From positions 124,001 through 188,000 of the IMG/VR virus record IMGVR_UViG_3300015265_000001: a stretch of DNA of 64,000 nt. One strand, given 5' to 3'. Made by a program: the position numbers and the translations under genes. Positions 28,499 to 55,025 of the stretch are shown here, piece after piece (within the stretch, counting starts at the first letter, position 1; every line of letters begins with the position of its first letter). Under the pieces are notes generated by a model, which saw only the letters and a program-made list of their open reading frames with translations, was not told the DNA's origin and searched no databases.

Positions 28499-31400
28499 AT
28501 GCAATTCCCTATTGTCCGTGAATATCAAGAGGACCTTGAAGGGCTTAATCCGGAAAACAAAATCCTGGATGAGCCCAAGTCCACACCAGCAGGTATTTGG
28601 TCTCGGATCATTGTTCCTGACCACGCACCGTTCTTTGTCGACTCGTTGGCAGTTAAAGCACCCAATGGCCAACCTCTGGACATGGGCGTGCATTACCAGA
28701 TCTTCAGCATCATGCCGCGCCTGACTGATCTGGCCGGTCAATCCGTAGCCTGCTTCATTGAGCTGCTGGATCCGGACCTCACCGACGTGCTGCTTGATTA
28801 TCACGTCGTTGGGGAATACTCGTTAATTGACAACCGCCTGCTGCAAATGATTTTCTCGGCTGTTAATGACGATCGTCCAGTGTTCTGGGAGAACCTCAAG
28901 AACAAACCTGTGGTGTTCCCACCGCACCTGCACAGCCATAGCCTGATCCGTACGGTTGTGTGCTGGCAGGATACGCTGGAAGTCATGGACCTTTACCTGG
29001 CCATGAAAGCAGCGAACGGTCGCGAACCAACGCAGATCCGTATCGACCACTTCTACGACCTGCTGACTCACTACATCACCGTCTACAGTGATATGCTGAC
29101 CGAGTTCTTGACCCGTCACATGCGGACCAACAACGAACACGGTTTGACGGCTTTGCAAGTTGGACTGGAAAAGGTTGACAACTACGAAACCGCCACCAGC
29201 GGTAACGTGTTGCAGGCGCGCAGCGATATGCACCTGACCCCTCAAGGGTTGGAAACCATTATCGAGACCTTTGGTTTCGATAGCTCGCAATACCTGAAGA
29301 CCGGTCTGTTGCCTATCTCTCGTTTTGGTAACACCAACTTCATTCCCGCCAACATCGACGGCTCGTTTGAAGGCTTCGGTGGGTTCAGTGAAACGGCTGG
29401 GATCACGCTGGAGTCGGACGGCTCGATGGCTTTTCTGTGGAACCGTTTCGACGGACGCACCACAGGCTTGTACTACTCGGTCCTGACAGATTCCGATGGT
29501 CCCAATGGCCAACTGCTGTACACCGGCTACAAGTACAACCATGCCCGTATCAACATCGACGGTGCTAGCGTGAACTTGATTGCACAGGGTAGTGGTGAAG
29601 ACGTTATCCTGGTGGGCGACAACGTTAAAGAACTGTACTACATCGGGGTAACCAACGGCTCCTTGGATCCGGCGAAACACGTGTACTCTCCGATTGACCT
29701 GAGACCGCTGGTTAACGCCATTTCCAGCAACCCAGGTTCGTTGAAGGTTAGCCAGCTCTTCCCGTTTATTAGCATCGCATTAATCGGGCAGTGGATCTAC
29801 GTCTTCCACAGTGCGTCTACGGGAACACCCGTTGCGAGTCCTAACCTCACCTTTGACATGCGGTTCAAGTTCTTCTACCGCGTTCCTTTGGCCAGCGTTA
29901 AGGCACAGACCCCAGTAACTGCGACTCGTCAGAACGTGACATTCCAGGATGCTGAAGGCGTACAGTGGAACAACTCACCATACTTCCGCTGGTGCGACAA
30001 GATTCTGGACGGTAACGGTAACGTGGCTAAATGCCTCTTCCCGTTTGTTCAGGGATCTAACGGCATGATCGGTTTCTATCGTTCGGCCATTACTCTGGTG
30101 GCGGAGAACCCATCGGTACCAGGTCAGTTTGCAATGAAGTTCGTGTCGGCGTTCTACGCCGCGCTAACCGGGGCAACGCTCAACACCCAGTTCAGTTATG
30201 TGCCGGAGTTGAATTATAACTTCGACCCTAATACGGGCGTGATGAGTCTGACGTCCAAGACAGCCATTTTCCCGGTTGACTTCTCTAAACCTTCTCCGGC
30301 AGTAGGTTACGAGCAAAACCAGTTCATGTACAACTCGGTATTCCTGTACGCCGGGCAAGGTGGTAACGTGCTCGCGGATGGTCGCTATGCGGCCTCAGGT
30401 TCTCCAGGTTATGCAGGGTTCCCGCGGTTAGGGTTGGTAGGTGTTCCACCGGGTTCTCACAACCGACACACCACAATCTCTAGACTGTGGGGGGTGGCTA
30501 AAGATTTCACTCAGAAATCCTGGAACGAGGTTCTTACCAGCCCGTTGGCATCGTCGACAAACCCACGGGCTCAAGCCTATGTTCCAACGGGTGAGTTCTA
30601 CGTTGCCGGTGGTCGCAACCAGCAGATCTATTCGAAGCTGTTCTTCAAAACCATCGCGGGTCGTTTTGCAGTGCGACCGGAGGTTACCAACCTCATTGTG
30701 GGGCAGGTAGTTTCTCGTCCTCTGACCGGTGATATCCGGCCGGTGAACGCACTGCCAGGCATGGGGATGGCGACGGTAGTGTTCGCTACACCTTATCTGA
30801 CGCAGTATGGGGTGGATGTGGGGGATGGTGCGTTCTGCATGAACTCTCAGACCAAGCACTTAGACAGAACGCGAGTGGGAACCGCTTGGCCTGCTAACAC
30901 GGCTAACCCAAATGACGTTCTCTTGGTTGCCAACCACAACAACCGCATTGAAGCAGATGGGACGGTAACCATTGTTCCTACTCTCGAGATCCTCTACCAA
31001 GAGAACATCGTCAATGCACTGCTGGGTCAGATCCAATTCACCGGGATGGCTACACGGTTCAAGTTCATTTCGATCTGTGATCCGACCTATTCCTCGATGT
31101 CGGCTCGAGCCGGTTGGCTGCCGGTCTGTGTGTCGGTTCAGTACGCACCTACGGGCGGCGCTGATATCAACACACTGTACTCGACGTTCATGACCATCCA
31201 GCCTACCTATGCTGCTGTTAACGGGCGTTGGCAGGTTACCGGATTTACCGTGCTCGATATCGTTCATGGCATTGGTCCCGGTCAGGCGGTTTATGAAAGT
31301 CAGCGTATCTATGGTTCCACCTACGACTATGAGACAGCATCGTCGATGCACTGCCCAATGCGTTGCCGGTATTATCTGAACGGCAATGCGTTGCAGGTCT

Positions 31401-32044
31401 ACATGGGTTCCGGGATAATGTCGTTTACGGCGGGCGATCAGTTTGTTCTTGACTGGATTTTTACCTACAACGATCGAAACACTCGGCGTTGGAGTAGTAA
31501 CACCAGACAGGAAACGAGCACCTCCACACCGTCGGTCTGCATTACTCCGGATAACGGCATCAGTCGTTCCTTTGGCTGGGCTGAATCCACAGGTGGGGCC
31601 GCGCTGATTCAGGCAGGTCCGGTTAACAACGCGGTGGTGGGTTCGGTTTATCCACAAACAGGTTGGATCATCTTCTTCAAAACCGCTATCAACGTGATCT
31701 TCAATGGTCGGCCATTTGTAATCCCGGCCGGCTCCATTGACTTGCGTGACATCGATTCTGCTCCGCAGAACAAAACGTTTTACATTTATGCGTTCCTCAG
31801 GGACGGTGTGGCGCAGTATGAGGTCACTACTCTGAAGCGGTTGGAAAGTCAGTACCAACTGTGGGTCGGCAAGGTCACCACGAACGCCAGTCAGATTCTC
31901 ACCATTGACCGGTACAACGTGATTGCCATGAACGGCCATCGCATCAGTGAGCTGAAACGCGGTAACTCCATTCCAGCGTCGTCTGGTTTGGTCGTCGAGG
32001 AAGGACAAATCCCTTGGTTCTACCAGAGTGAAATCCTTCCTTAA
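28499..32044 (+). CDS. Long tail (fibre-associated) protein, paralog 1
   Basis: 1181 aa; shared N-module, GSFEG block and C-terminal IDLRDID.APQNKTFY block. Confidence 0.7.
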   Translation: MQFPIVREYQEDLEGLNPENKILDEPKSTPAGIWSRIIVPDHAPFFVDSLAVKAPNGQPLDMGVHYQIFSIMPRLTDLAGQSVACFIELLDPDLTDVLLDYHVVGEYSLIDNRLLQMIFSAVNDDRPVFWENLKNKPVVFPPHLHSHSLIRTVVCWQDTLEVMDLYLAMKAANGREPTQIRIDHFYDLLTHYITVYSDMLTEFLTRHMRTNNEHGLTALQVGLEKVDNYETATSGNVLQARSDMHLTPQGLETIIETFGFDSSQYLKTGLLPISRFGNTNFIPANIDGSFEGFGGFSETAGITLESDGSMAFLWNRFDGRTTGLYYSVLTDSDGPNGQLLYTGYKYNHARINIDGASVNLIAQGSGEDVILVGDNVKELYYIGVTNGSLDPAKHVYSPIDLRPLVNAISSNPGSLKVSQLFPFISIALIGQWIYVFHSASTGTPVASPNLTFDMRFKFFYRVPLASVKAQTPVTATRQNVTFQDAEGVQWNNSPYFRWCDKILDGNGNVAKCLFPFVQGSNGMIGFYRSAITLVAENPSVPGQFAMKFVSAFYAALTGATLNTQFSYVPELNYNFDPNTGVMSLTSKTAIFPVDFSKPSPAVGYEQNQFMYNSVFLYAGQGGNVLADGRYAASGSPGYAGFPRLGLVGVPPGSHNRHTTISRLWGVAKDFTQKSWNEVLTSPLASSTNPRAQAYVPTGEFYVAGGRNQQIYSKLFFKTIAGRFAVRPEVTNLIVGQVVSRPLTGDIRPVNALPGMGMATVVFATPYLTQYGVDVGDGAFCMNSQTKHLDRTRVGTAWPANTANPNDVLLVANHNNRIEADGTVTIVPTLEILYQENIVNALLGQIQFTGMATRFKFISICDPTYSSMSARAGWLPVCVSVQYAPTGGADINTLYSTFMTIQPTYAAVNGRWQVTGFTVLDIVHGIGPGQAVYESQRIYGSTYDYETASSMHCPMRCRYYLNGNALQVYMGSGIMSFTAGDQFVLDWIFTYNDRNTRRWSSNTRQETSTSTPSVCITPDNGISRSFGWAESTGGAALIQAGPVNNAVVGSVYPQTGWIIFFKTAINVIFNGRPFVIPAGSIDLRDIDSAPQNKTFYIYAFLRDGVAQYEVTTLKRLESQYQLWVGKVTTNASQILTIDRYNVIAMNGHRISELKRGNSIPASSGLVVEEGQIPWFYQSEILP
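31758..31785 (+). repeat. 28-bp exact direct repeat, copy 1
   Basis: CTGCTCCGCAGAACAAAACGTTTTACAT, also at 35422-35449. Confidence 0.85.
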
Positions 32045-32055
32045 AACTTAGGTCC

Positions 32056-32095
32056 GGATAGCCGGGGAGTATTCCTCCCTGGCGTCCTCTCTTTT
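32056..32095 (+). terminator. Probable terminator
   Basis: GCCGGGGAG-TATTC-CTCCCTGGC followed by CTCTCTTTT. Confidence 0.55.
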
Positions 32096-32111
32096 GAATA
32101 AGGTTAAAGTG

Positions 32112-35100
32112 ATGGATTCCATTCCGCTCTTAGTGTTCGACATCCGTGGTGAAAATCCTGTCAACACCATTCCCGGTGAGAAGATCCCACTCAAGGATAA
32201 AACCTTGAACTGGACCATTCCTAACGGGTCCCCTTTCTTTAACGAACCTGGCTTGCTCGTGGTTCGTAACCAAGCGGGTGGTATTCTCACCCGTGATCGT
32301 GACTACTACGTAGAAGGTGAGTTCGTTCCTTTCTGCGAGATCACCGGTCGTTCTATTTGTTCCTTTATCCGTGTCTCTGACGCTATCCTGGCCGGCAACG
32401 ACTTCATCACCGTTGACTACCAGAGTATCGGGGCCTGGTTCGTACCCCGTAACGATCTGCAAGACTGGCTGGACCAGATGCACAAGGGTAAAACTCCGAT
32501 CCCTTGGAGCAAGGTGTTCTACGTACCACCTACCCTGCCACCAGAGTACCACACGCACAACATCAAAACTGAAATCATGGATTGGTATGATTTCACGTAC
32601 TTCTTCGCTGAGCTGGAGGGCATCCGCAGTACTCGGGATCCTGACTTCGATGACAAGTTGACTGCTGCGGTAGAAGACGCCTACAACAAGTTGTATGCTG
32701 CACGTGATCAACAACTGATCAGGCTGCAAGCGCATGACAAGAACTACAACAACCCGCACGGGGCTGACGCGTTCGACATTGACATGGGTAACCATGACAA
32801 CTACCACACTGCCACCCTTGCAGAGGACCTGGCAGGTGTCAGGAGCGACGTTCTCAGTACACCCCATGGCGTGGTAGCCCTGGCGAAGAGCTACGTCCCA
32901 GACACCGATAAGGCGATGCTGGCGGGTATCTTCCCGATCAGCTCGTATAGTGGCGAATCTTTCCTGCCTCCAAACATCAGTGGTTCGTTTGAAGGGATGG
33001 GTCAGCAAACTGAATGTTCGGGTATCTGCCTGGAACCAAGCGGCCTGATGATGGTGTTGTCTAACCACAACGACGGCCGGACTAAGGGTTTGTATTTTTC
33101 AGTGGTTGAGGATTACAACAAGGACAGCATCCGGGTCACCTACAGTAACTACAAGTATCGTCCACCAGCGCTCACTGCATTGGGGATCGATGTTGACCGC
33201 ATTATTGCGGGTAGTGGCAACAAGGTGATCATGACGGGTGTAGCGGGAACCAACGACTGGTTTATCTGCTTAACCAACGGTTCGTTTGATCCGGGTGGCC
33301 ACGCTTACGTCCGTTGCGACATGAGTGCTGTCAACGCATACTTCGGTTCGCCCTACGGTAATGCTACCGTGTTTGGCCACAACGACCAAGCCACCATTCA
33401 CCACATGGGTACTTACCTGGTGTTGGTGCAGGCGTACGTGGCAGAGGGTGGTGTGCCTAAAAGTCGCTTCTACCGTGTGAGAACAGCGGATGTTGTCAAT
33501 GGATTGGGGGTGGCATGGGAAGCTATTCCACTGACCTACCAGGACTGGGACGGTACTCAATACAACGGTGTGCTGGACTATCAAGCGCAACAAGTCTTCA
33601 AAGACGGTAACGGGCAGATTGTTAGATTCGGTCGCTTCACGATGCAACAGCCTATTACCTGGCTGTCGATTCTGCGTCGAGACTTGAACCTGTCGTGGCC
33701 GCAAACCGGTGGGGGTGGTAACTACTACTTCCACACACTTCAGTACTTCCACATGGTCTATTATGACCGTCCGGTAGATCCGTTGTTTGTTCAGATCCTA
33801 CCGGGAATTACTGAGATGTTCTATCTCTTCAATCCTGCCACAGGAGTAATGTCCAGACAGGGTAAGAGTCCAGCAATCTCGCTTAACTTCTCAGTGAGTG
33901 ACGGCGAAGCATACATCCGTCAATATCGACACCTCTACAACCAGTTGGTTGCTTATCAACAGCCATCAACTGTAATGTTGGCAACAGGTGAAATGGTGTC
34001 GACGTGTGTATTTGAGGGTGCGGCTGAGTTCCCATGCCGACTGAACATCGTCAAAATGAAGGGTATTACTAGCGCCGAACAATGGATGTCTCGACTGTTG
34101 GACAGCGATACCACTCAGGTTGAGCGTAATGTGCTCCACACCCCTTCGGTGCAGCCAGCGACCAAGAATGGTGTTTACACGACGGCCATGACGTTTGAAG
34201 CTGATGGCGAAGTATTCTGCGCGGCGGATATGTCAACACCAGATCTGATCCGTAAGGTGTTCTTCCGCAAGGTAAGTGGTGGCTACGCAGTCAGAGACGG
34301 CGTCAACAACTTGACCTTAGGTGCAAACATCTACTCACGTCCCCTTACCACCGAGATTTACTCAACCAACCTGACGCGTGTTGACGGCATGTTGGGGATT
34401 ACTGGTAGTGGTGCTGAATTGGCCGCAGCTGGTGTGGATCAGGGCAGTGGGTCGGCAAGCTTCTGCGCCTACTCAAGTCTGTATCCGGCAAGTCAGCATC
34501 TGCCGCAATGCCCAGAACTGCGAGCGCCAGCGAGTGGTAACGTGCTGGTTTCATTCCCACGGACGTACACCAAAGCACTGGACACGATCAACAAGGTAGC
34601 GACCTACTCGGCAACCAGTTTCTATGGTTTCCGGCAGAACGTTATTGATCAGATCAGAGCGTTGACCGGGAATGCCAGTAAATGGGCATTCACGATTAAC
34701 CATTTGGGTGCCGAGAACGGCGGGATGTTCCGTGGGTTGAATCACTCGGTAGTCATGGTCAACTGGATTGTAGAAGGCACGGCTCGTTTCCGGTCTCGGT
34801 TGTTGATCGGTGTTCCTGTTGTGGAAGCCCCGAATGCTAACCACCCTGGTGTGTACCTCATCACCAGCTTTAACTGGGCGTCTGCTCCGGCTGATGTTTC
34901 TACGTGTCCATGGGCAGTACTACAAGGATACGAGCAGTGGCAGAAGCTAGACACTATCTACGTTGCTAAGCCATTACTGTCGGGTTATCGGGATGGTAAC
35001 AACCTGAAGATCTCGATGGTGTCTGGACATGAGCACGTGGTGGCCACTTCTCGTCAAGTTCCTATTGCTATTTTCGACCTGAACCTGGGCAACAGCCAGA

Positions 35101-35708
35101 TCGAGAACATGGCAATCGGGTCTCTTGCTCGTGATCGGGGTGACGTTGCCGTGATGTGGCCGGGTGTTGGGATGACAGATGTCAGTATCACTAACCAGGA
35201 CGGTTTTGACGGTAAGTTAATTACCCAAACCCTGTTCCCGTATCAGTTCACGGGTGGTGGTGCTGCGATTCATGCGAGGTCTGGGGTCGGTTATATCGTC
35301 CCTACGTCGGTATATCCGGAGATTGGTTGGTTGTTGTTTATCCAAGACAACATTCGGATGATGATCAACGGAACGGCTTACTCGATTCAGGGTGGGACGA
35401 TCGACCTTCGGGATATTGACCCTGCTCCGCAGAACAAAACGTTTTACATGTACGCAACAATCGAGGATGAAACACCTAAGTATCTGTTGTCGGCAGTACC
35501 GCTTCGCAAGAGCGGCTCCATGTTGCGGGTAGCGACCATCGTTACCAACGATAAACAGATCTTGACCATCACTCGCGAACAACCGTTTATGGTGGGCGAT
35601 CTGCTGCTGAGCTATACCCGTGAAGGTGGGACCATCCCTATGTCCACGGGCTACCCTCAAGACGAAGGCTTGTTTGTATTCCTTCGTCAGGGCGAGCTGT
35701 TGCCTTAA
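32112..35708 (+). CDS. Long tail (fibre-associated) protein, paralog 2
   Basis: About 1198 aa from ATG 32112; same conserved blocks as paralog 1. Confidence 0.7.
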   Translation: MDSIPLLVFDIRGENPVNTIPGEKIPLKDKTLNWTIPNGSPFFNEPGLLVVRNQAGGILTRDRDYYVEGEFVPFCEITGRSICSFIRVSDAILAGNDFITVDYQSIGAWFVPRNDLQDWLDQMHKGKTPIPWSKVFYVPPTLPPEYHTHNIKTEIMDWYDFTYFFAELEGIRSTRDPDFDDKLTAAVEDAYNKLYAARDQQLIRLQAHDKNYNNPHGADAFDIDMGNHDNYHTATLAEDLAGVRSDVLSTPHGVVALAKSYVPDTDKAMLAGIFPISSYSGESFLPPNISGSFEGMGQQTECSGICLEPSGLMMVLSNHNDGRTKGLYFSVVEDYNKDSIRVTYSNYKYRPPALTALGIDVDRIIAGSGNKVIMTGVAGTNDWFICLTNGSFDPGGHAYVRCDMSAVNAYFGSPYGNATVFGHNDQATIHHMGTYLVLVQAYVAEGGVPKSRFYRVRTADVVNGLGVAWEAIPLTYQDWDGTQYNGVLDYQAQQVFKDGNGQIVRFGRFTMQQPITWLSILRRDLNLSWPQTGGGGNYYFHTLQYFHMVYYDRPVDPLFVQILPGITEMFYLFNPATGVMSRQGKSPAISLNFSVSDGEAYIRQYRHLYNQLVAYQQPSTVMLATGEMVSTCVFEGAAEFPCRLNIVKMKGITSAEQWMSRLLDSDTTQVERNVLHTPSVQPATKNGVYTTAMTFEADGEVFCAADMSTPDLIRKVFFRKVSGGYAVRDGVNNLTLGANIYSRPLTTEIYSTNLTRVDGMLGITGSGAELAAAGVDQGSGSASFCAYSSLYPASQHLPQCPELRAPASGNVLVSFPRTYTKALDTINKVATYSATSFYGFRQNVIDQIRALTGNASKWAFTINHLGAENGGMFRGLNHSVVMVNWIVEGTARFRSRLLIGVPVVEAPNANHPGVYLITSFNWASAPADVSTCPWAVLQGYEQWQKLDTIYVAKPLLSGYRDGNNLKISMVSGHEHVVATSRQVPIAIFDLNLGNSQIENMAIGSLARDRGDVAVMWPGVGMTDVSITNQDGFDGKLITQTLFPYQFTGGGAAIHARSGVGYIVPTSVYPEIGWLLFIQDNIRMMINGTAYSIQGGTIDLRDIDPAPQNKTFYMYATIEDETPKYLLSAVPLRKSGSMLRVATIVTNDKQILTITREQPFMVGDLLLSYTREGGTIPMSTGYPQDEGLFVFLRQGELLP
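35422..35449 (+). repeat. 28-bp exact direct repeat, copy 2
   Basis: Identical to 31758-31785. Confidence 0.85.
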
Positions 35709-48219: not shown

Positions 48220-48450
48220 ATGAGCGAACAGTGCTACATTTGTAAATTCGTAATGGAAGATAACGCGGGGACGGAGTTTATCCCCTACCAACTTCCAGAG
48301 CTGAGTGATTACCCTGTTATGGTTTGTGCTGTTTGCGAGCGATCTAAAGAGCACCAGGACAACGTGGAAATGACTGACCTCAACCACAGAGCCGAAGCCA
48401 GTCACCAGGAATACATGGCGTCGCTTCACGAAGAAGAAAACAACGATTAA
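48220..48450 (+). CDS. Small zinc-ribbon protein
   Basis: CYIC...CAVC; start at ATG 48220. Confidence 0.6.
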   Translation: MSEQCYICKFVMEDNAGTEFIPYQLPELSDYPVMVCAVCERSKEHQDNVEMTDLNHRAEASHQEYMASLHEEENND

Positions 48451-48472: not shown

Positions 48473-49408
48473 ATGGGAACTGATATGGAATTTAAGCCGG
48501 TCTTGTGTATCTACCACAAAGACTGCCTGGATGGCATCGGAGCGGCTTGGGTCGTTTGGCGTCACTTCAAGAACATGGGCATTGAGATCGAACTCGTTGC
48601 CGCGAACTACAAAGACAAGATGCCCGACGTAGATGGCAAGGTGGTTTACGTAGTGGATTTCAGTTATCCTCGCCCTCTCATGGAAGACATGCTGCGTCGT
48701 GCCCATGATGTGGTGGTACTGGATCACCACACGTCGGCGAAGAAAAACCTCGAAGGACTCTTTGTGGTAGACGAGAGCCATTCGGGGGCAATGCTGGCCT
48801 GGAAGTATTTCAACCATACTCCTCCGCCACAAGGTTTGTTGTACGTTGAAGATCGTGACCTGTGGAAGTTCAAATACCCAGAGACCAATAACTGGGTAAC
48901 CGCGGCGTTCTCGTATCCTTTCAACGTCGAGCAGTTCGATGCGTTGATGAATACTGATCCATTGGACCTTATTCATGAAGGCAAAATACTGTTGCGTAAA
49001 CATCAGCAGGATTGTTCGCGAGTAGCCCTGAACACCCGCACGATGAAATGCATGGGCTATGAAGTACCTGTGGTCAACGCTAACATCTTCTTTGCGTCTG
49101 ACCTGGGTCACCTCCTTTCTGCAAACGCCCCGTTCGCGCTGATCTACATGGATCTGCCTGGCGGGCGTAAGTATTCCATTCGTTGTCAGAAAGACACTGA
49201 CTTCGATGTATCGCTTATCGCCGAGTACTTTGGTGGTGGCGGTCATAAAGACGCGTCCGGTTTCACGATCGCTTATGACGACAAGCGCTTTGCTCGCAGC
49301 CATGAGGTGCTTGATTACACCGTCTGGGAGAAGATCAAGGGAACCTGCGGCTACATGATGTACAGCCTCAAAACTGAACTCAAAGCAATTGCTGGGATCT
49401 TCAAATGA
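48473..49408 (+). CDS. DHH/DHHA1 phosphoesterase
   Basis: HKDCLDG, VDF, LDHH, SGA, DRDLW and GGGGHKDASG motifs. Confidence 0.9.
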   Translation: MGTDMEFKPVLCIYHKDCLDGIGAAWVVWRHFKNMGIEIELVAANYKDKMPDVDGKVVYVVDFSYPRPLMEDMLRRAHDVVVLDHHTSAKKNLEGLFVVDESHSGAMLAWKYFNHTPPPQGLLYVEDRDLWKFKYPETNNWVTAAFSYPFNVEQFDALMNTDPLDLIHEGKILLRKHQQDCSRVALNTRTMKCMGYEVPVVNANIFFASDLGHLLSANAPFALIYMDLPGGRKYSIRCQKDTDFDVSLIAEYFGGGGHKDASGFTIAYDDKRFARSHEVLDYTVWEKIKGTCGYMMYSLKTELKAIAGIFK

Positions 49409-49698
49409 AAAACAAGGCAGTTAAGTTCTTTCGTTATGCCGGTGTCTGGCGTTATAAGGAAATCGGTAAGGATGTAGCAGACGCAGTTGATACCCGGATG
49501 TTGGAAACCGTTCTGGGTGTTATGGGCGGGCCTTTGGTGTATGTCTGCCGCGATACCGGTAAACCAGAGTTTACCAAACTGCGCATTGAAGTACGTAACG
49601 GCTTTATCATCCGGGCTTCTGTAGCCGAAGACGATAACGTTCCTTTTGCAGAAGGTAAAGAGGTGGAAGAATTCTTCATCCGCCCATTGATGAATTAA
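49405..49698 (+). CDS. Hypothetical protein
   Basis: 97 aa, ATGA overlap. Confidence 0.6.
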   Translation: MKNKAVKFFRYAGVWRYKEIGKDVADAVDTRMLETVLGVMGGPLVYVCRDTGKPEFTKLRIEVRNGFIIRASVAEDDNVPFAEGKEVEEFFIRPLMN

Positions 49699-49709
49699 GG
49701 AAACCAGGT

Positions 49710-49877
49710 ATGGAAAGCGAATATGTGTTTGCTATCTCGGACGAAGGTACCCTGTGTCCAGTCCCAGGCAATGAGGCGCTTTACGAAGCAGTTAAAGACG
49801 CCTGCCATCGTTTGAGGCCACGCGTCGGTTCCGGTAAGACCATGGTACGCGTGGAAGTTAAACGTATCAAGGACTAA
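49710..49877 (+). CDS. Small hypothetical protein (55 aa), not in ORF track
   Basis: MESEYVFAISDEGTLCPVPG...KRIKD; AAGGA RBS; fills the gap exactly. Confidence 0.6.
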   Translation: MESEYVFAISDEGTLCPVPGNEALYEAVKDACHRLRPRVGSGKTMVRVEVKRIKD

Positions 49878-49882
49878 CCACA

Positions 49883-50332
49883 ATGGAACTCGATTACAGT
49901 TATGTGAGCGTGCAGCTTAAACCAGAGCTACAGGCGGACATCATCAACGCTATGGTGTTGGCGGGTGTTTCTCCGGAAGCTAAGCACGAGCTGCACTGCA
50001 CGATGGTTTACGATAAGCGTGACATCGACAAACCGCTGTGCAACCTGATGCCTCCATCTAAGGAATTCAAGGCGAACGTTATCTCCTTGGAAACCCTGGG
50101 TGATGGCATGGTGTTTCATCTTACCAGCACTGATATGCTGGAAGAGTTCCGCCGGTTGAAAGATGAGGGTTACGTGCATTCGTACGGAACACCTTTGTTC
50201 CACATGTCGTTGAAGTATGATTTCGATAAACACGACATCCTCGCCATCAACCATGCGTTCGCTGATTGGGGTGGCCGTACGTTGATCTTCCACAACGAAC
50301 AGTTCGGCATCAAGAAACCCAAGAAGAAGTAA
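49883..50332 (+). CDS. acb1: 2H phosphoesterase, Acb1 (T4 gp57B)-like
   Basis: 149 aa; LHCTMVYD and G..HSY...FHMSLKYD match T4 Acb1 IHSTICYS and G..HDF...PHITLSYN in order and approximate spacing (recalled sequence). Confidence 0.7.
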   Translation: MELDYSYVSVQLKPELQADIINAMVLAGVSPEAKHELHCTMVYDKRDIDKPLCNLMPPSKEFKANVISLETLGDGMVFHLTSTDMLEEFRRLKDEGYVHSYGTPLFHMSLKYDFDKHDILAINHAFADWGGRTLIFHNEQFGIKKPKKK

Positions 50333-50339
50333 CCCGGTA

Positions 50340-50389
50340 CTACTCCTACTCCCTTTACGGGGAGTAGGAGTAGGCTACCTTTATTTTTT
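50340..50389 (+). terminator. Intrinsic terminator
   Basis: CTACTCCTACTCCCT-TTAC-GGGGAGTAGGAGTAG followed by a T-run. Confidence 0.85.
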
Positions 50390-50660: not shown

Positions 50661-50719
50661 TTCAATAAAGATTATTCGCAATGACGAATGATCTAACCTC
50701 ACTTGAAAGGAGTACCGCT

Positions 50720-51856
50720 ATGAACACTAAGAACGTACAAGTTGAAAACACCGCATCCATGCTGGTAGCGGTAGTCTCCAACCTTCGTACTGAAAGTGCA
50801 CCGGAGGCCACTCAAATGGCCTATGTGAAATCGGTGATGCTGGACCAATCCCAGGTTCCTACCCGGGATCGTCAAGTGGTGCTGCAACTGGTGAACAACC
50901 AGCTCGGCACCAAATGGACTTTCAACCAGATCAAGAAAGCTGGTGAGTTTGTCCCAGGTGATACCGGCCCGGTCAAAGTTCAAGAACTGAACGGCGTCTC
51001 CCAGGTCAACGTCGGCGGCCAGCCAAATGAAGCTTCCTTCGTGGAGCCCAAGCTGACTGCCGATCACGCTCACCAACAATCGACTTCCCAGTCGACCACC
51101 ACTGCTCCTGACCACAACGGTCAAACCACCTCCAACGCAAACGAACAGGATGACAACACCATGAACGCACAAGCCAACATGAACAACGACACCGCCCAAT
51201 CCGTACAGGGTTTCGAAGTCGCCATGATCGCCGTCGGCCGCACCACCCCAGAACAGCGCGCTGCTGCCTGGATCGCTTACCTGGCTACCTCCCCTGAGCT
51301 GACCGCCAAGTGGGACGCCTTCCTGCTGGCCGCTGACAAAGCCACGTCGTTCGACGAAAACTTCATCACCTTCAGCGACAACCTGGGCGAAGAAGAAGGC
51401 AGCCAAGCTGTTCACGGCTTCATGCGCTGGTGTGCAGCCAACCAGCCGAAAGACGATGCTCACTACGCCGACAAGTCGCGTTTCAGCCTGATGGGTGATC
51501 GTGACGAAGGCGTTCGCACCAGCTGGATTGCAGCCGGTAGCGCAGTGATCGGCGGCGGCATGGAAATGTTCGCTCGCGGTGGTCTGACCGCTGGTTCGGC
51601 AATCGGTACTCTGGCAGGTTCCGTCGGCGCGTTCTTCGCCGGTGAACAAGTCGACGAGCACGTCGAAAGCCAATTCGGTCGTTACGTGGTCGGCGGCATG
51701 ATCGGTCTGGCCCTGGGTGGCGCAGGTTCGGCCCTGGGTCGCAGCCTGCTGCCTGGCAACAGCCTGATCAACATGGGTACCGCTGAAGTGGTTCCTGCTG
51801 CGATCGAAGTTCTGCCTGCCCCACAACAAGGCCAGGTCGGCTTCTTCGGCCTGTAA
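50720..51856 (+). CDS. Multidomain protein with C-terminal glycine-zipper membrane domain
   Basis: 378 aa from ATG 50720 (AAGGAG RBS); Q/T/N linker; C-terminal domain homologous to 14736-15068; strong codon bias. Confidence 0.75.
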   Translation: MNTKNVQVENTASMLVAVVSNLRTESAPEATQMAYVKSVMLDQSQVPTRDRQVVLQLVNNQLGTKWTFNQIKKAGEFVPGDTGPVKVQELNGVSQVNVGGQPNEASFVEPKLTADHAHQQSTSQSTTTAPDHNGQTTSNANEQDDNTMNAQANMNNDTAQSVQGFEVAMIAVGRTTPEQRAAAWIAYLATSPELTAKWDAFLLAADKATSFDENFITFSDNLGEEEGSQAVHGFMRWCAANQPKDDAHYADKSRFSLMGDRDEGVRTSWIAAGSAVIGGGMEMFARGGLTAGSAIGTLAGSVGAFFAGEQVDEHVESQFGRYVVGGMIGLALGGAGSALGRSLLPGNSLINMGTAEVVPAAIEVLPAPQQGQVGFFGL

Positions 51857-54182: not shown

Positions 54183-55025
54183 ATGCTGAAAATCAATCTG
54201 CGTGATCATTGCAATCGACAGGATGCGCGTTTCGATATTGTCGCCATCTGTCATACAGCGTTAACCCACGGTCTCTCTCCAGCGAAAGTGGAAGAGATCA
54301 AAGGCAAGCTGATCTGGGACCTGAGTACTCCGGCACGCGATGGCGACGGTGAATCATCGGCGTTGTTTATTGCCAATCGCCTGAAACGGTCCTGGAACGT
54401 TGATCTGATCTTGGATTACAACGCTGGCGTCGACGGCAAGCTGAGTGATAGCCATCACGGGTATTCCAGCAGCTGGGTCAACAGCGTGTACACCATCGCG
54501 TTCCGGCATCCCATTCATGTTGAATCTGCTGAACTCGCAGGAATGCGTAATCGGCTGGCCGCCTACGAGAAAGTGTTCGGCTGTGCCGGGATGTCGATCG
54601 AGGAGATTCTGAGTCTGGCCAGTGACAAACAGCCGGTTGTCGATGACGGTGCCGGTAATCGTCGTGGCCAAGCGCAGTTCGATGAGCCTGATGAGCCATC
54701 GCTGTTTGTAGAAGGTGATGAAGAACGACTCAACCCGTACTGGGTGCTGTACACCACCAACTACCATCGCGGCCTGCTCACCAAGGAACAAGTCGAGAAC
54801 GTCGGCAACAACATGCTGACCCAACTCCAACAGTGTTCCGCAGAACGTCTGGCGGAAATCGGCCCTCGCGGTATCCCCAAAGTTCTCACCAAATACGGTC
54901 ATGTGTCTATGGCCTGGGTGGTCTACTTCAAGAACACCCAGAAACCTGACCTCAACTTCGCTCAGATTACTCGTCTGGGTCTAACTGTCGCTGAACAAGT
55001 AAAGGAGTACACCCCTCGTGGCTAA
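54183..55025 (+). CDS. Hypothetical protein
   Basis: 280 aa; RLAAYE...S.EEI motif. Confidence 0.6.
   Translation: MLKINLRDHCNRQDARFDIVAICHTALTHGLSPAKVEEIKGKLIWDLSTPARDGDGESSALFIANRLKRSWNVDLILDYNAGVDGKLSDSHHGYSSSWVNSVYTIAFRHPIHVESAELAGMRNRLAAYEKVFGCAGMSIEEILSLASDKQPVVDDGAGNRRGQAQFDEPDEPSLFVEGDEERLNPYWVLYTTNYHRGLLTKEQVENVGNNMLTQLQQCSAERLAEIGPRGIPKVLTKYGHVSMAWVVYFKNTQKPDLNFAQITRLGLTVAEQVKEYTPRG

What the first reader, a model, noticed from the sequence alone, without database searches (positions are those of the whole stretch)
49883..50332. Acb1-like 2H phosphoesterase: probable anti-CBASS enzyme in a jumbo phage
Seen: HCT and HMS motifs with Acb1-like context, spacing and length (149 aa). Established: T4 Acb1 (gp57B) hydrolyses CBASS cyclic di- and trinucleotides. 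Inference: signalling-based abortive defences act outside any phage nucleus, so a nucleus-forming-type phage would still benefit. The second motif is HxS rather than HxT, which may shift substrate range.
Basis: partly seen in the sequence, partly recalled or inferred. Interest (0 to 1): 0.65.

Follow-up and report, generated by a model that had tools for sequence, protein, structure and literature searches.

The report
Acb1-family phosphodiesterase in jumbo phage
A 149-residue gene in a 227-kb soil phage that encodes the nuclear-shell protein belongs to the known Acb1 family of enzymes that cut bacterial immune signalling nucleotides; it is a divergent, biochemically untested member of a known family, not a new kind of system.

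Summary

The genome is a complete 226,985-bp phage with a chimallin homologue, so "jumbo, nucleus-forming type" holds. The gene is under strong purifying selection (dN/dS 0.05-0.10).

It belongs to a distinct jumbo-phage clade (EL, RisingSun, OBP, pTD1, Miami, EJP2...). That clade always has HxS in motif 2, lacks counterparts of T4 W74 and W147, and has only a short basic tail where Acb1 has its lid. HxS lies within the canonical 2H motif, so it does not by itself predict a substrate shift.

No member of this clade has been assayed. UniProt, Pfam and a 2025 structural survey already label relatives as Acb1 or 2H PDEs. Verdict: a new member of a known kind, probably cleaving cyclic oligonucleotide signals, with substrate range unknown.

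The parts
49883..50332 (+). Acb1-family 2H phosphodiesterase gene (149 aa, stop included)
   Evidence: ORF; Pfam PF23474 34.9 bits, cut-off 27; AF2 model pLDDT 88.8; best structural matches 9Q2Y and 7T27; dN/dS 0.05-0.10
49994..50002 (+). First catalytic motif, His38-Cys39-Thr40
   Evidence: H38 invariant and T40 near-invariant in 23 homologues. Both invariant across 13 diverse members including T4 and PDE-9. Align to T4 H44/T46
50201..50209 (+). Second catalytic motif, His107-Met108-Ser109 (HxS, a clade signature)
   Evidence: Invariant in 23 homologues. Aligns to T4 H113/T115. HxS in all 15 jumbo-clade members, HxT in T4-type and PDE-9
50168..50185 (+). Conserved G96-x2-H99-x-Y101 segment before motif 2; Y101 aligns to the base-stacking F107 of T4 Acb1
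   Evidence: G96 and H99 invariant across 13 members including T4 and PDE-9. hhalign pairs H99/Y101 with T4 H105/F107. F107 role from PMC9117128
50312..50329 (+). Short lysine-rich C-terminal tail (residues 144-149) where T4/FBB1 Acb1 has its Trp-containing lid
   Evidence: The last strand of the model ends at residue 143, and the final residue block (141-149) has mean pLDDT 73. No Trp in the tail, which is shorter or absent in EL and RisingSun. Lid definition
49869..49873 (+). Shine-Dalgarno-like AAGGA, 9 nt before the ATG
   Evidence: Read directly from the sequence
50336..50389 (+). Intrinsic-terminator-like hairpin (15-bp perfect inner stem) followed by a T-run, right after the stop codon
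   Evidence: RNA fold -33.8 kcal/mol, z -6.4, 0 of 200 shuffles as stable. The simple pattern scan missed it
48473..49408 (+). Context: DHH/DHHA1 phosphoesterase, co-directional upstream neighbour
   Evidence: Pfam DHH 6e-7 and DHHA1 5e-5, phrog_4771 3e-83. Same-strand position upstream of the 2H gene kept in 8 metagenomic relatives and in phage EL. Subfamily ambiguous
49405..49877 (+). Context: two small ORFs (97 aa at 49405..49698, 55 aa at 49710..49877) packed between the DHH and 2H genes
   Evidence: orf97 is 84-91% identical in the four close relatives. No family and no convincing fold match

Best explanation
The gene encodes a small, single-domain, metal-independent 2H phosphodiesterase of the Acb1 family (PF23474). 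Shown here: the fold, the family assignment, the intact catalytic tetrad H38/T40/H107/S109, and strong purifying selection. Inferred: like T4/FBB1 Acb1 and the jumbo-phage enzyme BCSR5 2H PDE-9, it binds a 3'-5'-linked cyclic di- or trinucleotide made by host CD-NTases (CBASS), and possibly cA3 from type III CRISPR. It would open the ring through a 2',3'-cyclic phosphate intermediate, so the effector is never activated. Because these signals and effectors are cytoplasmic, the chimallin shell gives no protection against them, and a signal-degrading enzyme is useful to a nucleus-forming phage. The protein belongs to a separate jumbo-phage clade (HxS in motif 2, no W74 or W147 equivalents, only a short basic tail in place of a lid). 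Its substrate range probably differs from T4 Acb1 and cannot be predicted from sequence.
Confidence: 0.6

Rival explanations
1. It is a housekeeping nucleic-acid enzyme: a 2',3'-cyclic phosphodiesterase or RNA-end healing enzyme. It would work with the neighbouring RNase H, DHH/DHHA1 phosphoesterase and ligase in primer removal, RNA turnover or nucleotide salvage, not in immune evasion.
For: It is the last gene of a tightly packed co-directional array containing SbcC-like, NAD-ligase, RNase H and DHH genes. That block is syntenic with phage EL ORF122-127 and with 8 metagenomic relatives. The gene tree follows the apparent order of phage relatedness, which suggests vertical inheritance. Two aromatic ligand clamps and the lid of T4 Acb1 are missing. 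Eight of 13 clade members also weakly match the 2'-5' RNA ligase superfamily model. Some viral 2H PDE groups cleave no immune messenger.
Against: The window protein matches no LigT, CPDase or 2'-5' ligase Pfam model even at E 10, and does match Acb1. The closest structures are the two cGAMP-cleaving phage enzymes. It has the compact ~150-aa Acb1 size, not the 170-190 aa of LigT-type enzymes. The gene was not detected in phiKZ-type chimalliviruses, so it is not essential core machinery. In other phages its neighbours differ entirely (DHFR, chimallin/RNAP, NAMPT/Sir2), so the replication-module context is lineage-specific. T4 acb1 also occupies a fixed place in a conserved genome.
Confidence: 0.2
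2. It is an immune-signal phosphodiesterase with a target spectrum shifted away from canonical CBASS dinucleotides. It might act mainly on cA3 or other cyclic oligoadenylates of type III CRISPR, or on 2'-5'-linked signals, or have a narrow range that spares 2'3'-c-di-AMP so that it does not trigger Panoptes.
For: Substrate range tracks the 2H core rather than the lid, and differs even within the T4 Acb1 structural group; PDE-9 spares 2'3'-c-di-AMP. This clade has a different pocket (no W74 equivalent) and almost no lid. Type III CRISPR with the cA3-activated NucC is a documented defence against nucleus-forming phages.
Against: This is pure inference, and no residue-level or experimental evidence selects any particular substrate. 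T4 Acb1 already cleaves cA3, so the rival overlaps with the main explanation. The 3D pocket of the model could not be inspected with the tools at hand.
Confidence: 0.15
3. It is a catalytically dead or purely structural (virion) protein, as suggested by the GenBank label 'putative structural protein' on the RisingSun, Joad and pEa_SNUABM homologues.
For: Only the database labels.
Against: The catalytic tetrad is invariant across the clade under strong purifying selection. RisingSun gp120 is not among the proteins detected by mass spectrometry in the phage lysate. The gene does not lie among structural genes.
Confidence: 0.02

Closest known systems
T4 / Erwinia phage FBB1 Acb1 (gp57B; PDB 7T26, 7T27; Hobbs et al. 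2022, PMC9117128)
   Different: Only about 14-15% identity. Second motif is HxS, not HxT. No aromatic at the W74 position. No W147-containing C-terminal lid, only a 6-residue Lys-rich tail. E141 equivalent unresolved. Not found by single-sequence search. Host phage is a chimallin-encoding jumbo phage, not a T4-like phage. Activity untested.
2H PDE-9 of Burkholderia jumbo phage BCSR5 (PDB 9Q2G, 9Q2Y; Doherty et al. 2025, bioRxiv 10.1101/2025.08.21.671373)
   Different: PDE-9 has a 15-residue N-terminal lid that the window protein lacks (its strand 1 starts at residue 3). PDE-9 keeps the Trp equivalent to T4 W74 and has HxT in motif 2. It falls outside the HxS clade in the tree.
Orthologues in isolated jumbo phages: EL ORF126, RisingSun gp120, OBP_061, AH04_67, pTD1 gp030, Miami gp080, EJP2_129, BF gp110
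   Same: Same clade (HxS motif 2; 25-48% identity). EL shares the whole ligase / RNase H / DHH / 2H gene order. EL, RisingSun, OBP, AH04, pTD1 and Miami encode chimallin. UniProt names several of them Anti-CBASS protein Acb1.
   Different: None has been characterised. Annotations vary ('RNA ligase', 'hypothetical', 'putative structural protein', 'phosphoesterase'). Gene neighbourhoods differ outside the EL-like lineage. AH04_67 carries an extra ~90-residue N-terminal extension.
Generic 2H phosphoesterases (E. coli LigT/ThpR, Arabidopsis CPDase 1FSI, CNPase, AKAP18, Usb1)
   Same: Same superfamily fold and H-x-T/S-x catalytic motifs. Metal-independent transesterification and hydrolysis chemistry.

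Membership tests
Acb1 family in the broad sense (Pfam PF23474) | Score above Pfam's curated gathering threshold, with no better-scoring family | tested here: met
   34.9 bits against a cut-off of 27, E 1.5e-8, the only family listed at E up to 10. The six-frame genome search gives 34.3 bits. 13 of 13 diverse clade members match.
Acb1 family in the broad sense (Pfam PF23474) | Compact single-domain 2H fold (~150 aa, six central strands) closest to solved Acb1-type structures | tested here: met
   AF2 pLDDT 88.8 with 6 strands and 3 helices. The top hits by two aligners are 9Q2Y/9Q2G and 7T26/7T27.
Acb1 family in the broad sense (Pfam PF23474) | Two H-x-T/S catalytic motifs forming the active-site tetrad | tested here: met
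   H38/T40 and H107/S109, invariant or nearly so, aligned to T4 H44/T46/H113/T115. Ser is an accepted alternative.
Acb1 family in the broad sense (Pfam PF23474) | Hydrolysis of CBASS cyclic di- or trinucleotides and protection of the phage from CBASS | not testable with these tools
   Needs enzyme assays and phage genetics. No clade member has been assayed.
T4-type Acb1 in the strict sense (T4 gp57B / FBB1) | Aromatic base-stacking residues Y12 and F107 | tested here: met
   Y7 is near-invariant in the 13-member alignment. Y101 (Tyr, Phe or Trp across the HxS clade) aligns to F107.
T4-type Acb1 in the strict sense (T4 gp57B / FBB1) | Aromatic clamps W74 (Phe in FBB1) and W147 | tested here: not met
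   W74 aligns to Glu70 (hhalign) or Leu72 (MAFFT via PDE-9). There is no Trp or other aromatic in the tail after residue 141. This rests on sequence alignment only; the 3D pocket was not inspected.
T4-type Acb1 in the strict sense (T4 gp57B / FBB1) | Ordered C-terminal lid (residues 145-152) closing over the ligand | tested here: not met
   Only 6 Lys-rich residues follow the last strand. EL and RisingSun have even less. There is also no N-terminal lid of the PDE-9 kind.
T4-type Acb1 in the strict sense (T4 gp57B / FBB1) | E141 contact to adenine N6 (cleavage 3' of adenosine) | tested here: inconclusive
   The C-terminal third is outside the hhalign region. Glu139 is present here and in most clade members but not all, and its equivalence to E141 or E138 cannot be settled without a superposition.
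LigT / 2'-5' RNA ligase-like / CPDase 2H enzymes | Match to PF02834, PF13563 or related models, and best structural similarity to these enzymes | tested here: not met
   [not shown]
Chimalliviridae-type (nucleus-forming) jumbo phage, for the genome | Genome over 200 kb that encodes the nuclear shell protein chimallin | tested here: met
   226,985 bp, complete, with DTR. tblastn with the OBP nuclear shell protein gives E 4e-46 and 26% identity over 593 aa at C1:74214-75956. PhuZ, the non-virion RNAP and actual nucleus formation were not tested.

The most novel reading that the evidence does not exclude
The HxS, lid-poor clade found in chimallin-encoding phages may be a functionally distinct Acb1 subfamily. 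Its specificity could be tuned to the defences that still reach nucleus-forming phages, for example cA3 from type III CRISPR or CBASS-NucC, while sparing 2'3'-c-di-AMP so as not to trip Panoptes. In the EL-like lineage it might also act in series with the co-directional DHH/DHHA1 phosphoesterase, which would digest the linear products to mononucleotides. That would be a two-enzyme signal-erasing module not yet described in phages.
Probability: 0.12. Interest if true: 0.6.

Novelty: new member of a known kind. Interest (0 to 1): 0.3.

Why it matters
Nucleus-forming jumbo phages are shielded from DNA-targeting defences but remain exposed to cytoplasmic, signal-based abortive systems. A 2026 review still lists Tad1 as the only anti-defence protein described in jumbo phages. 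A conserved, strongly selected Acb1-family enzyme in many chimallin-encoding lineages (EL, RisingSun, OBP, pTD1, Miami and this soil phage) is a concrete, testable candidate for how they deal with CBASS and type III CRISPR signals. Its altered pocket and near-absent lid make it a useful natural variant for learning what sets substrate range in viral 2H phosphodiesterases. The idea and the family assignment are already in databases and recent literature, so the value lies in characterisation, not discovery.

Tried and rejected
1. Single-sequence phmmer against the PDB returned only designer pentatricopeptide repeats. Each repeat scored about 4 bits and the scores were summed, so the hit is spurious. 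The clade profile search was needed to reach Acb1.

2. Megablast of the locus against isolated phages found no near-identical record. NCBIfam has no model for the protein.

3. The 'putative structural protein' label on the RisingSun, Joad and SNUABM homologues is unsupported. RisingSun gp120 is absent from the published MS table.

4. 'RNA ligase' (PHROG 755 and RefSeq) is a legacy name of the 2H superfamily, not evidence of ligase activity.

5. The DHH neighbour as a nanoRNase partner is not established. The DHH and GGGH motifs are present, but the nearest models are ambiguous: archaeal RecJ for the N-terminal half at 1.4e-6, and NrnA/TmPDE only for the DHHA1 motif, all far below cut-offs. I therefore did not run a complex prediction.

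7. Chimallin search with the OBP protein in BCSR5, EJP2 and BF found nothing. The same search also missed phiKZ, a known positive, so these negatives are uninformative. The PF23474 negatives in phiKZ, 201phi2-1 and PhiPA3 carry the same caveat, although tblastn agrees.

8. For expression, only rhizosphere, soil and microbial-mat DNA runs hold the sequence and no RNA run does. Read laying was not used because contigs cannot show expression.

9. The sigma-70 promoter and simple terminator scans were at or below the shuffle background.

10. Doherty's structural-group assignment of AH04_67, pTD1 gp030 and EJP2_129 is only in figures and could not be read.

11. The large representative-protein search was not used because family scans settled the assignment.

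12. I first took BCSR5 for a ~70-kb phage from a paper abstract. The record shows 227,351 bp.

Full report
**Observation.** The window holds one ATG-started ORF at 49883..50332 on the + strand, 149 aa long. An AAGGA ribosome-binding box lies 9 nt upstream. Directly after the stop codon there is a very stable hairpin followed by a T-run: a 15-bp perfect stem, -33.8 kcal/mol, z -6.4. His-Cys-Thr occupies residues 38-40 and His-Met-Ser residues 107-109. The two histidines are 69 residues apart, exactly as in T4 Acb1, which has H44 and H113.

**More than chance.** Against Pfam the protein matches only Acb1 (PF23474), with E 1.5e-8 and 34.9 bits against a curated cut-off of 27. PHROGs places it in phrog_755, which carries the legacy name 'RNA ligase' (3e-17). 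A word-based search of 5.8 billion proteins returned 22 homologues at 51-89% identity. All of them carry the precomputed PF23474 assignment, and several lie on contigs of 214-243 kb. In the alignment of these, H38, H107, M108 and S109 are invariant and T40 is nearly so. Against the four closest relatives dN/dS is 0.045-0.095. This is an expressed-type, constrained gene with an intact active site.

**Which 2H family.**

- Sequence profiles. A profile of the clade finds the Acb1 chain 9Q2G as its best PDB hit, with both motifs aligned, although the E-value is marginal at 0.03. An hhalign of a 33-sequence jumbo-clade profile against a 31-sequence T4-type Acb1 profile gives 95.9% probability and E 6e-9 over residues 18-117. 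It pairs H38/T40 with H44/T46, H99/Y101 with H105/F107, and H107/S109 with H113/T115.
- Pfam across the clade. All 13 diverse members, including T4 and PDE-9 as controls, match Acb1 best. Eight also hit the generic 2'-5' RNA ligase superfamily model weakly, which is expected for any 2H protein.

The margin is modest but consistent across methods. In the viral structure library the nearest protein is the RisingSun homologue (TM 0.87-0.90), which UniProt already names 'Anti-CBASS protein Acb1', as it does several other jumbo-phage members.

**What the closest solved enzyme does.** 9Q2G and 9Q2Y are '2H PDE-9' of Doherty et al. 2025 (bioRxiv 10.1101/2025.08.21.671373). This enzyme falls in the same structural group as T4 Acb1. 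It cleaves 3'3'-cGAMP robustly, is poor on 2'3'-c-di-AMP so it does not trigger Panoptes, and uses an N-terminal rather than a C-terminal lid. Its source, Burkholderia phage BCSR5, is itself a 227,351-bp phage. That paper's list of 75 structure-detected phage 2H PDEs includes AH04_67, pTD1 gp030 and EJP2_129. All three are homologues of the window protein in my tblastn, but none was purified.

**The genome.** The window is bases 124001-188000 of a complete 226,985-bp virus record with direct terminal repeats. The window carries phiKZ-like core PHROGs: a DnaB-like helicase, a polymerase, an SbcC-like protein, an NAD-ligase and virion proteins. Outside the window the genome encodes a chimallin homologue, with E 4e-46 against the annotated nuclear shell protein of phage OBP. 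'Jumbo phage of the nucleus-forming type' is thus supported at the gene-content level; nucleus formation itself is untested. The DNA occurs in rhizosphere and soil metagenomes, and no RNA run holds it.

**A distinct clade.** tblastn found homologues in 67 isolated phage records, all below 60% identity and nearly all from genomes of 180-366 kb: EL-like 48%, RisingSun/Joad 39%, then the EJP2, Miami, pTD1, OBP, AH04, BF and Aeromonas PS1 groups. Chimallin is detectable in EL, RisingSun, Miami and pTD1 and is annotated in OBP and AH04 about 3 kb from the 2H gene. All 15 members I aligned have HxS (HMS, HIS or HVS) in the second motif, whereas T4-type Acb1 and PDE-9 have HxT. In a maximum-likelihood tree the HxS sequences group together (84/84) apart from PDE-9 and T4-type Acb1. 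Within that group the branching runs from the window clade to EL to RisingSun to the rest, which suggests vertical descent. The gene was not detected in phiKZ, 201phi2-1 or PhiPA3, so it is not part of the universal chimallivirus core. A failed positive control in a related search is a warning that such negatives are soft.

**How it differs from characterised Acb1.** Hobbs et al. 2022 (PMC9117128) define four groups of features: the catalytic tetrad; four aromatic base clamps (T4 Y12, W74, F107, W147); E141, which contacts adenine N6; and a C-terminal lid at 145-152.

- The tetrad is kept, with T to S at the fourth position.
- Equivalents of Y12 (Y7) and F107 (Y101) are conserved.
- W74 aligns to Glu70 or Leu72.
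- There is no Trp or lid. Only six Lys-rich residues follow the last strand, and EL and RisingSun have fewer.
- There is no N-terminal lid like that of PDE-9, since strand 1 starts at residue 3.
- E141 could not be mapped.

The HxS itself is inside the canonical superfamily definition H-x-T/S-x (PMC5434554). The pocket and lid differences are the more plausible source of any shift, given that Doherty et al. find the core governs specificity and that a lid-less T4 Acb1 lost activity in vivo.

**Context.** The gene is the last in a tightly spaced co-directional array: NAD-ligase, a 473-aa protein, RNase H (Pfam 2e-41), a 76-aa CxxC...CxxC ORF, a DHH/DHHA1 phosphoesterase (phrog_4771 3e-83), orf97, orf55, then the 2H gene and the hairpin. 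This order is shared with phage EL ORF122-127. DHH lies upstream of 2H on the same strand in all eight metagenomic relatives, even where DHH identity is only 38%. The arrangement is absent elsewhere. RisingSun has DHFR next door, OBP and AH04 have chimallin and an RNAP subunit, and EJP2 and BF have NAMPT, Sir2 and Nudix genes. The DHH subfamily is ambiguous between RecJ-like and NrnA/TmPDE-like, so a functional coupling with the 2H enzyme is only a hypothesis. This replication-module setting is the main argument for the housekeeping rival.

**Conclusion.** Membership of the Acb1 family in the Pfam sense is well supported. Membership of the T4-type subgroup is not, because two clamps and the lid are missing. 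The most likely function is metal-independent ring-opening of cytoplasmic cyclic oligonucleotide immune signals, with a confidence of about 0.6. A further 0.15 goes to a shifted immune-signal spectrum and 0.2 to a housekeeping RNA or nucleotide role.

The concept is already in the literature: reviews note that jumbo phages encode phosphodiesterases that may disrupt signalling, and that type III CRISPR with NucC restricts nucleus-forming phages. AntiDefenseFinder-type annotations of acb1 in jumbo phages have also been published. The finding is therefore a new, divergent, untested member of a known kind.

Noticed in passing
window 48473..49408 (+): DHH/DHHA1 phosphoesterase with intact DHH and GGGH motifs. 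It lies upstream of the 2H gene on the same strand in phage EL and in all 8 metagenomic relatives. Its subfamily is ambiguous between archaeal RecJ-like and NrnA/TmPDE-like. It could be a replication nuclease, or it could finish degrading the linear oligonucleotides released by the 2H enzyme.
   Followed up: partly
[not shown]
   Followed up: partly
window 48220..48450 (+): Unlisted 76-aa ORF with two CxxC pairs (zinc-ribbon-like), packed between RNase H (4-nt gap) and DHH (22-nt gap). It shows that the array is continuous, not a discrete four-gene operon.
   Followed up: no
window 50681..51856 (+): 391-aa protein downstream of the terminator, with a low-complexity middle and a glycine-rich hydrophobic C-terminus (glycine-zipper-like). 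It is conserved in relatives and matches weakly within phage EL ORF127. No Pfam or NCBIfam family matches.
   Followed up: no
window 28499..32044 and 32094..35708 (+): Two adjacent ~1,200-aa paralogues both match phrog_3573, with virion or tail-like N-terminal parts. They look like a tandem duplication of a large structural gene.
   Followed up: no
L055 (Escherichia phage EJP2) 3486..3917; L060 (Serratia phage BF) 3486..3932: In these ~350-kb phages the Acb1-family homologue sits between nicotinamide phosphoribosyltransferase and Sir2/Nudix genes. That is an NAD-metabolism cluster which may itself be counter-defence.
   Followed up: no
L059 (Erwinia phage AH04) 3129..3854; L058 (Pseudomonas phage OBP) 3393..3854: In AH04 and OBP the homologue lies about 3 kb downstream of the annotated nuclear shell protein and an RNAP subunit. 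AH04_67 has an extra ~90-residue N-terminal extension of unknown function.
   Followed up: no
L010 (Burkholderia phage BCSR5, record 54466-54684): BCSR5 has a second, sub-threshold PF23474 match (E 0.02, 11.8 bits) besides PDE-9. It may be a second divergent 2H protein.
   Followed up: no
phage records: Annotation of this family is inconsistent across databases: 'RNA ligase' (RefSeq and PHROG 755), 'putative structural protein', 'hypothetical protein', 'phosphoesterase', and 'Anti-CBASS protein Acb1' (UniProt). The first two labels are unsupported.
   Followed up: yes
The genome search: The OBP chimallin query failed to detect the known chimallin of phiKZ, because the loose first-look filter found no candidate. 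Negative results of this tool for very divergent proteins should not be read as absence.
   Followed up: yes
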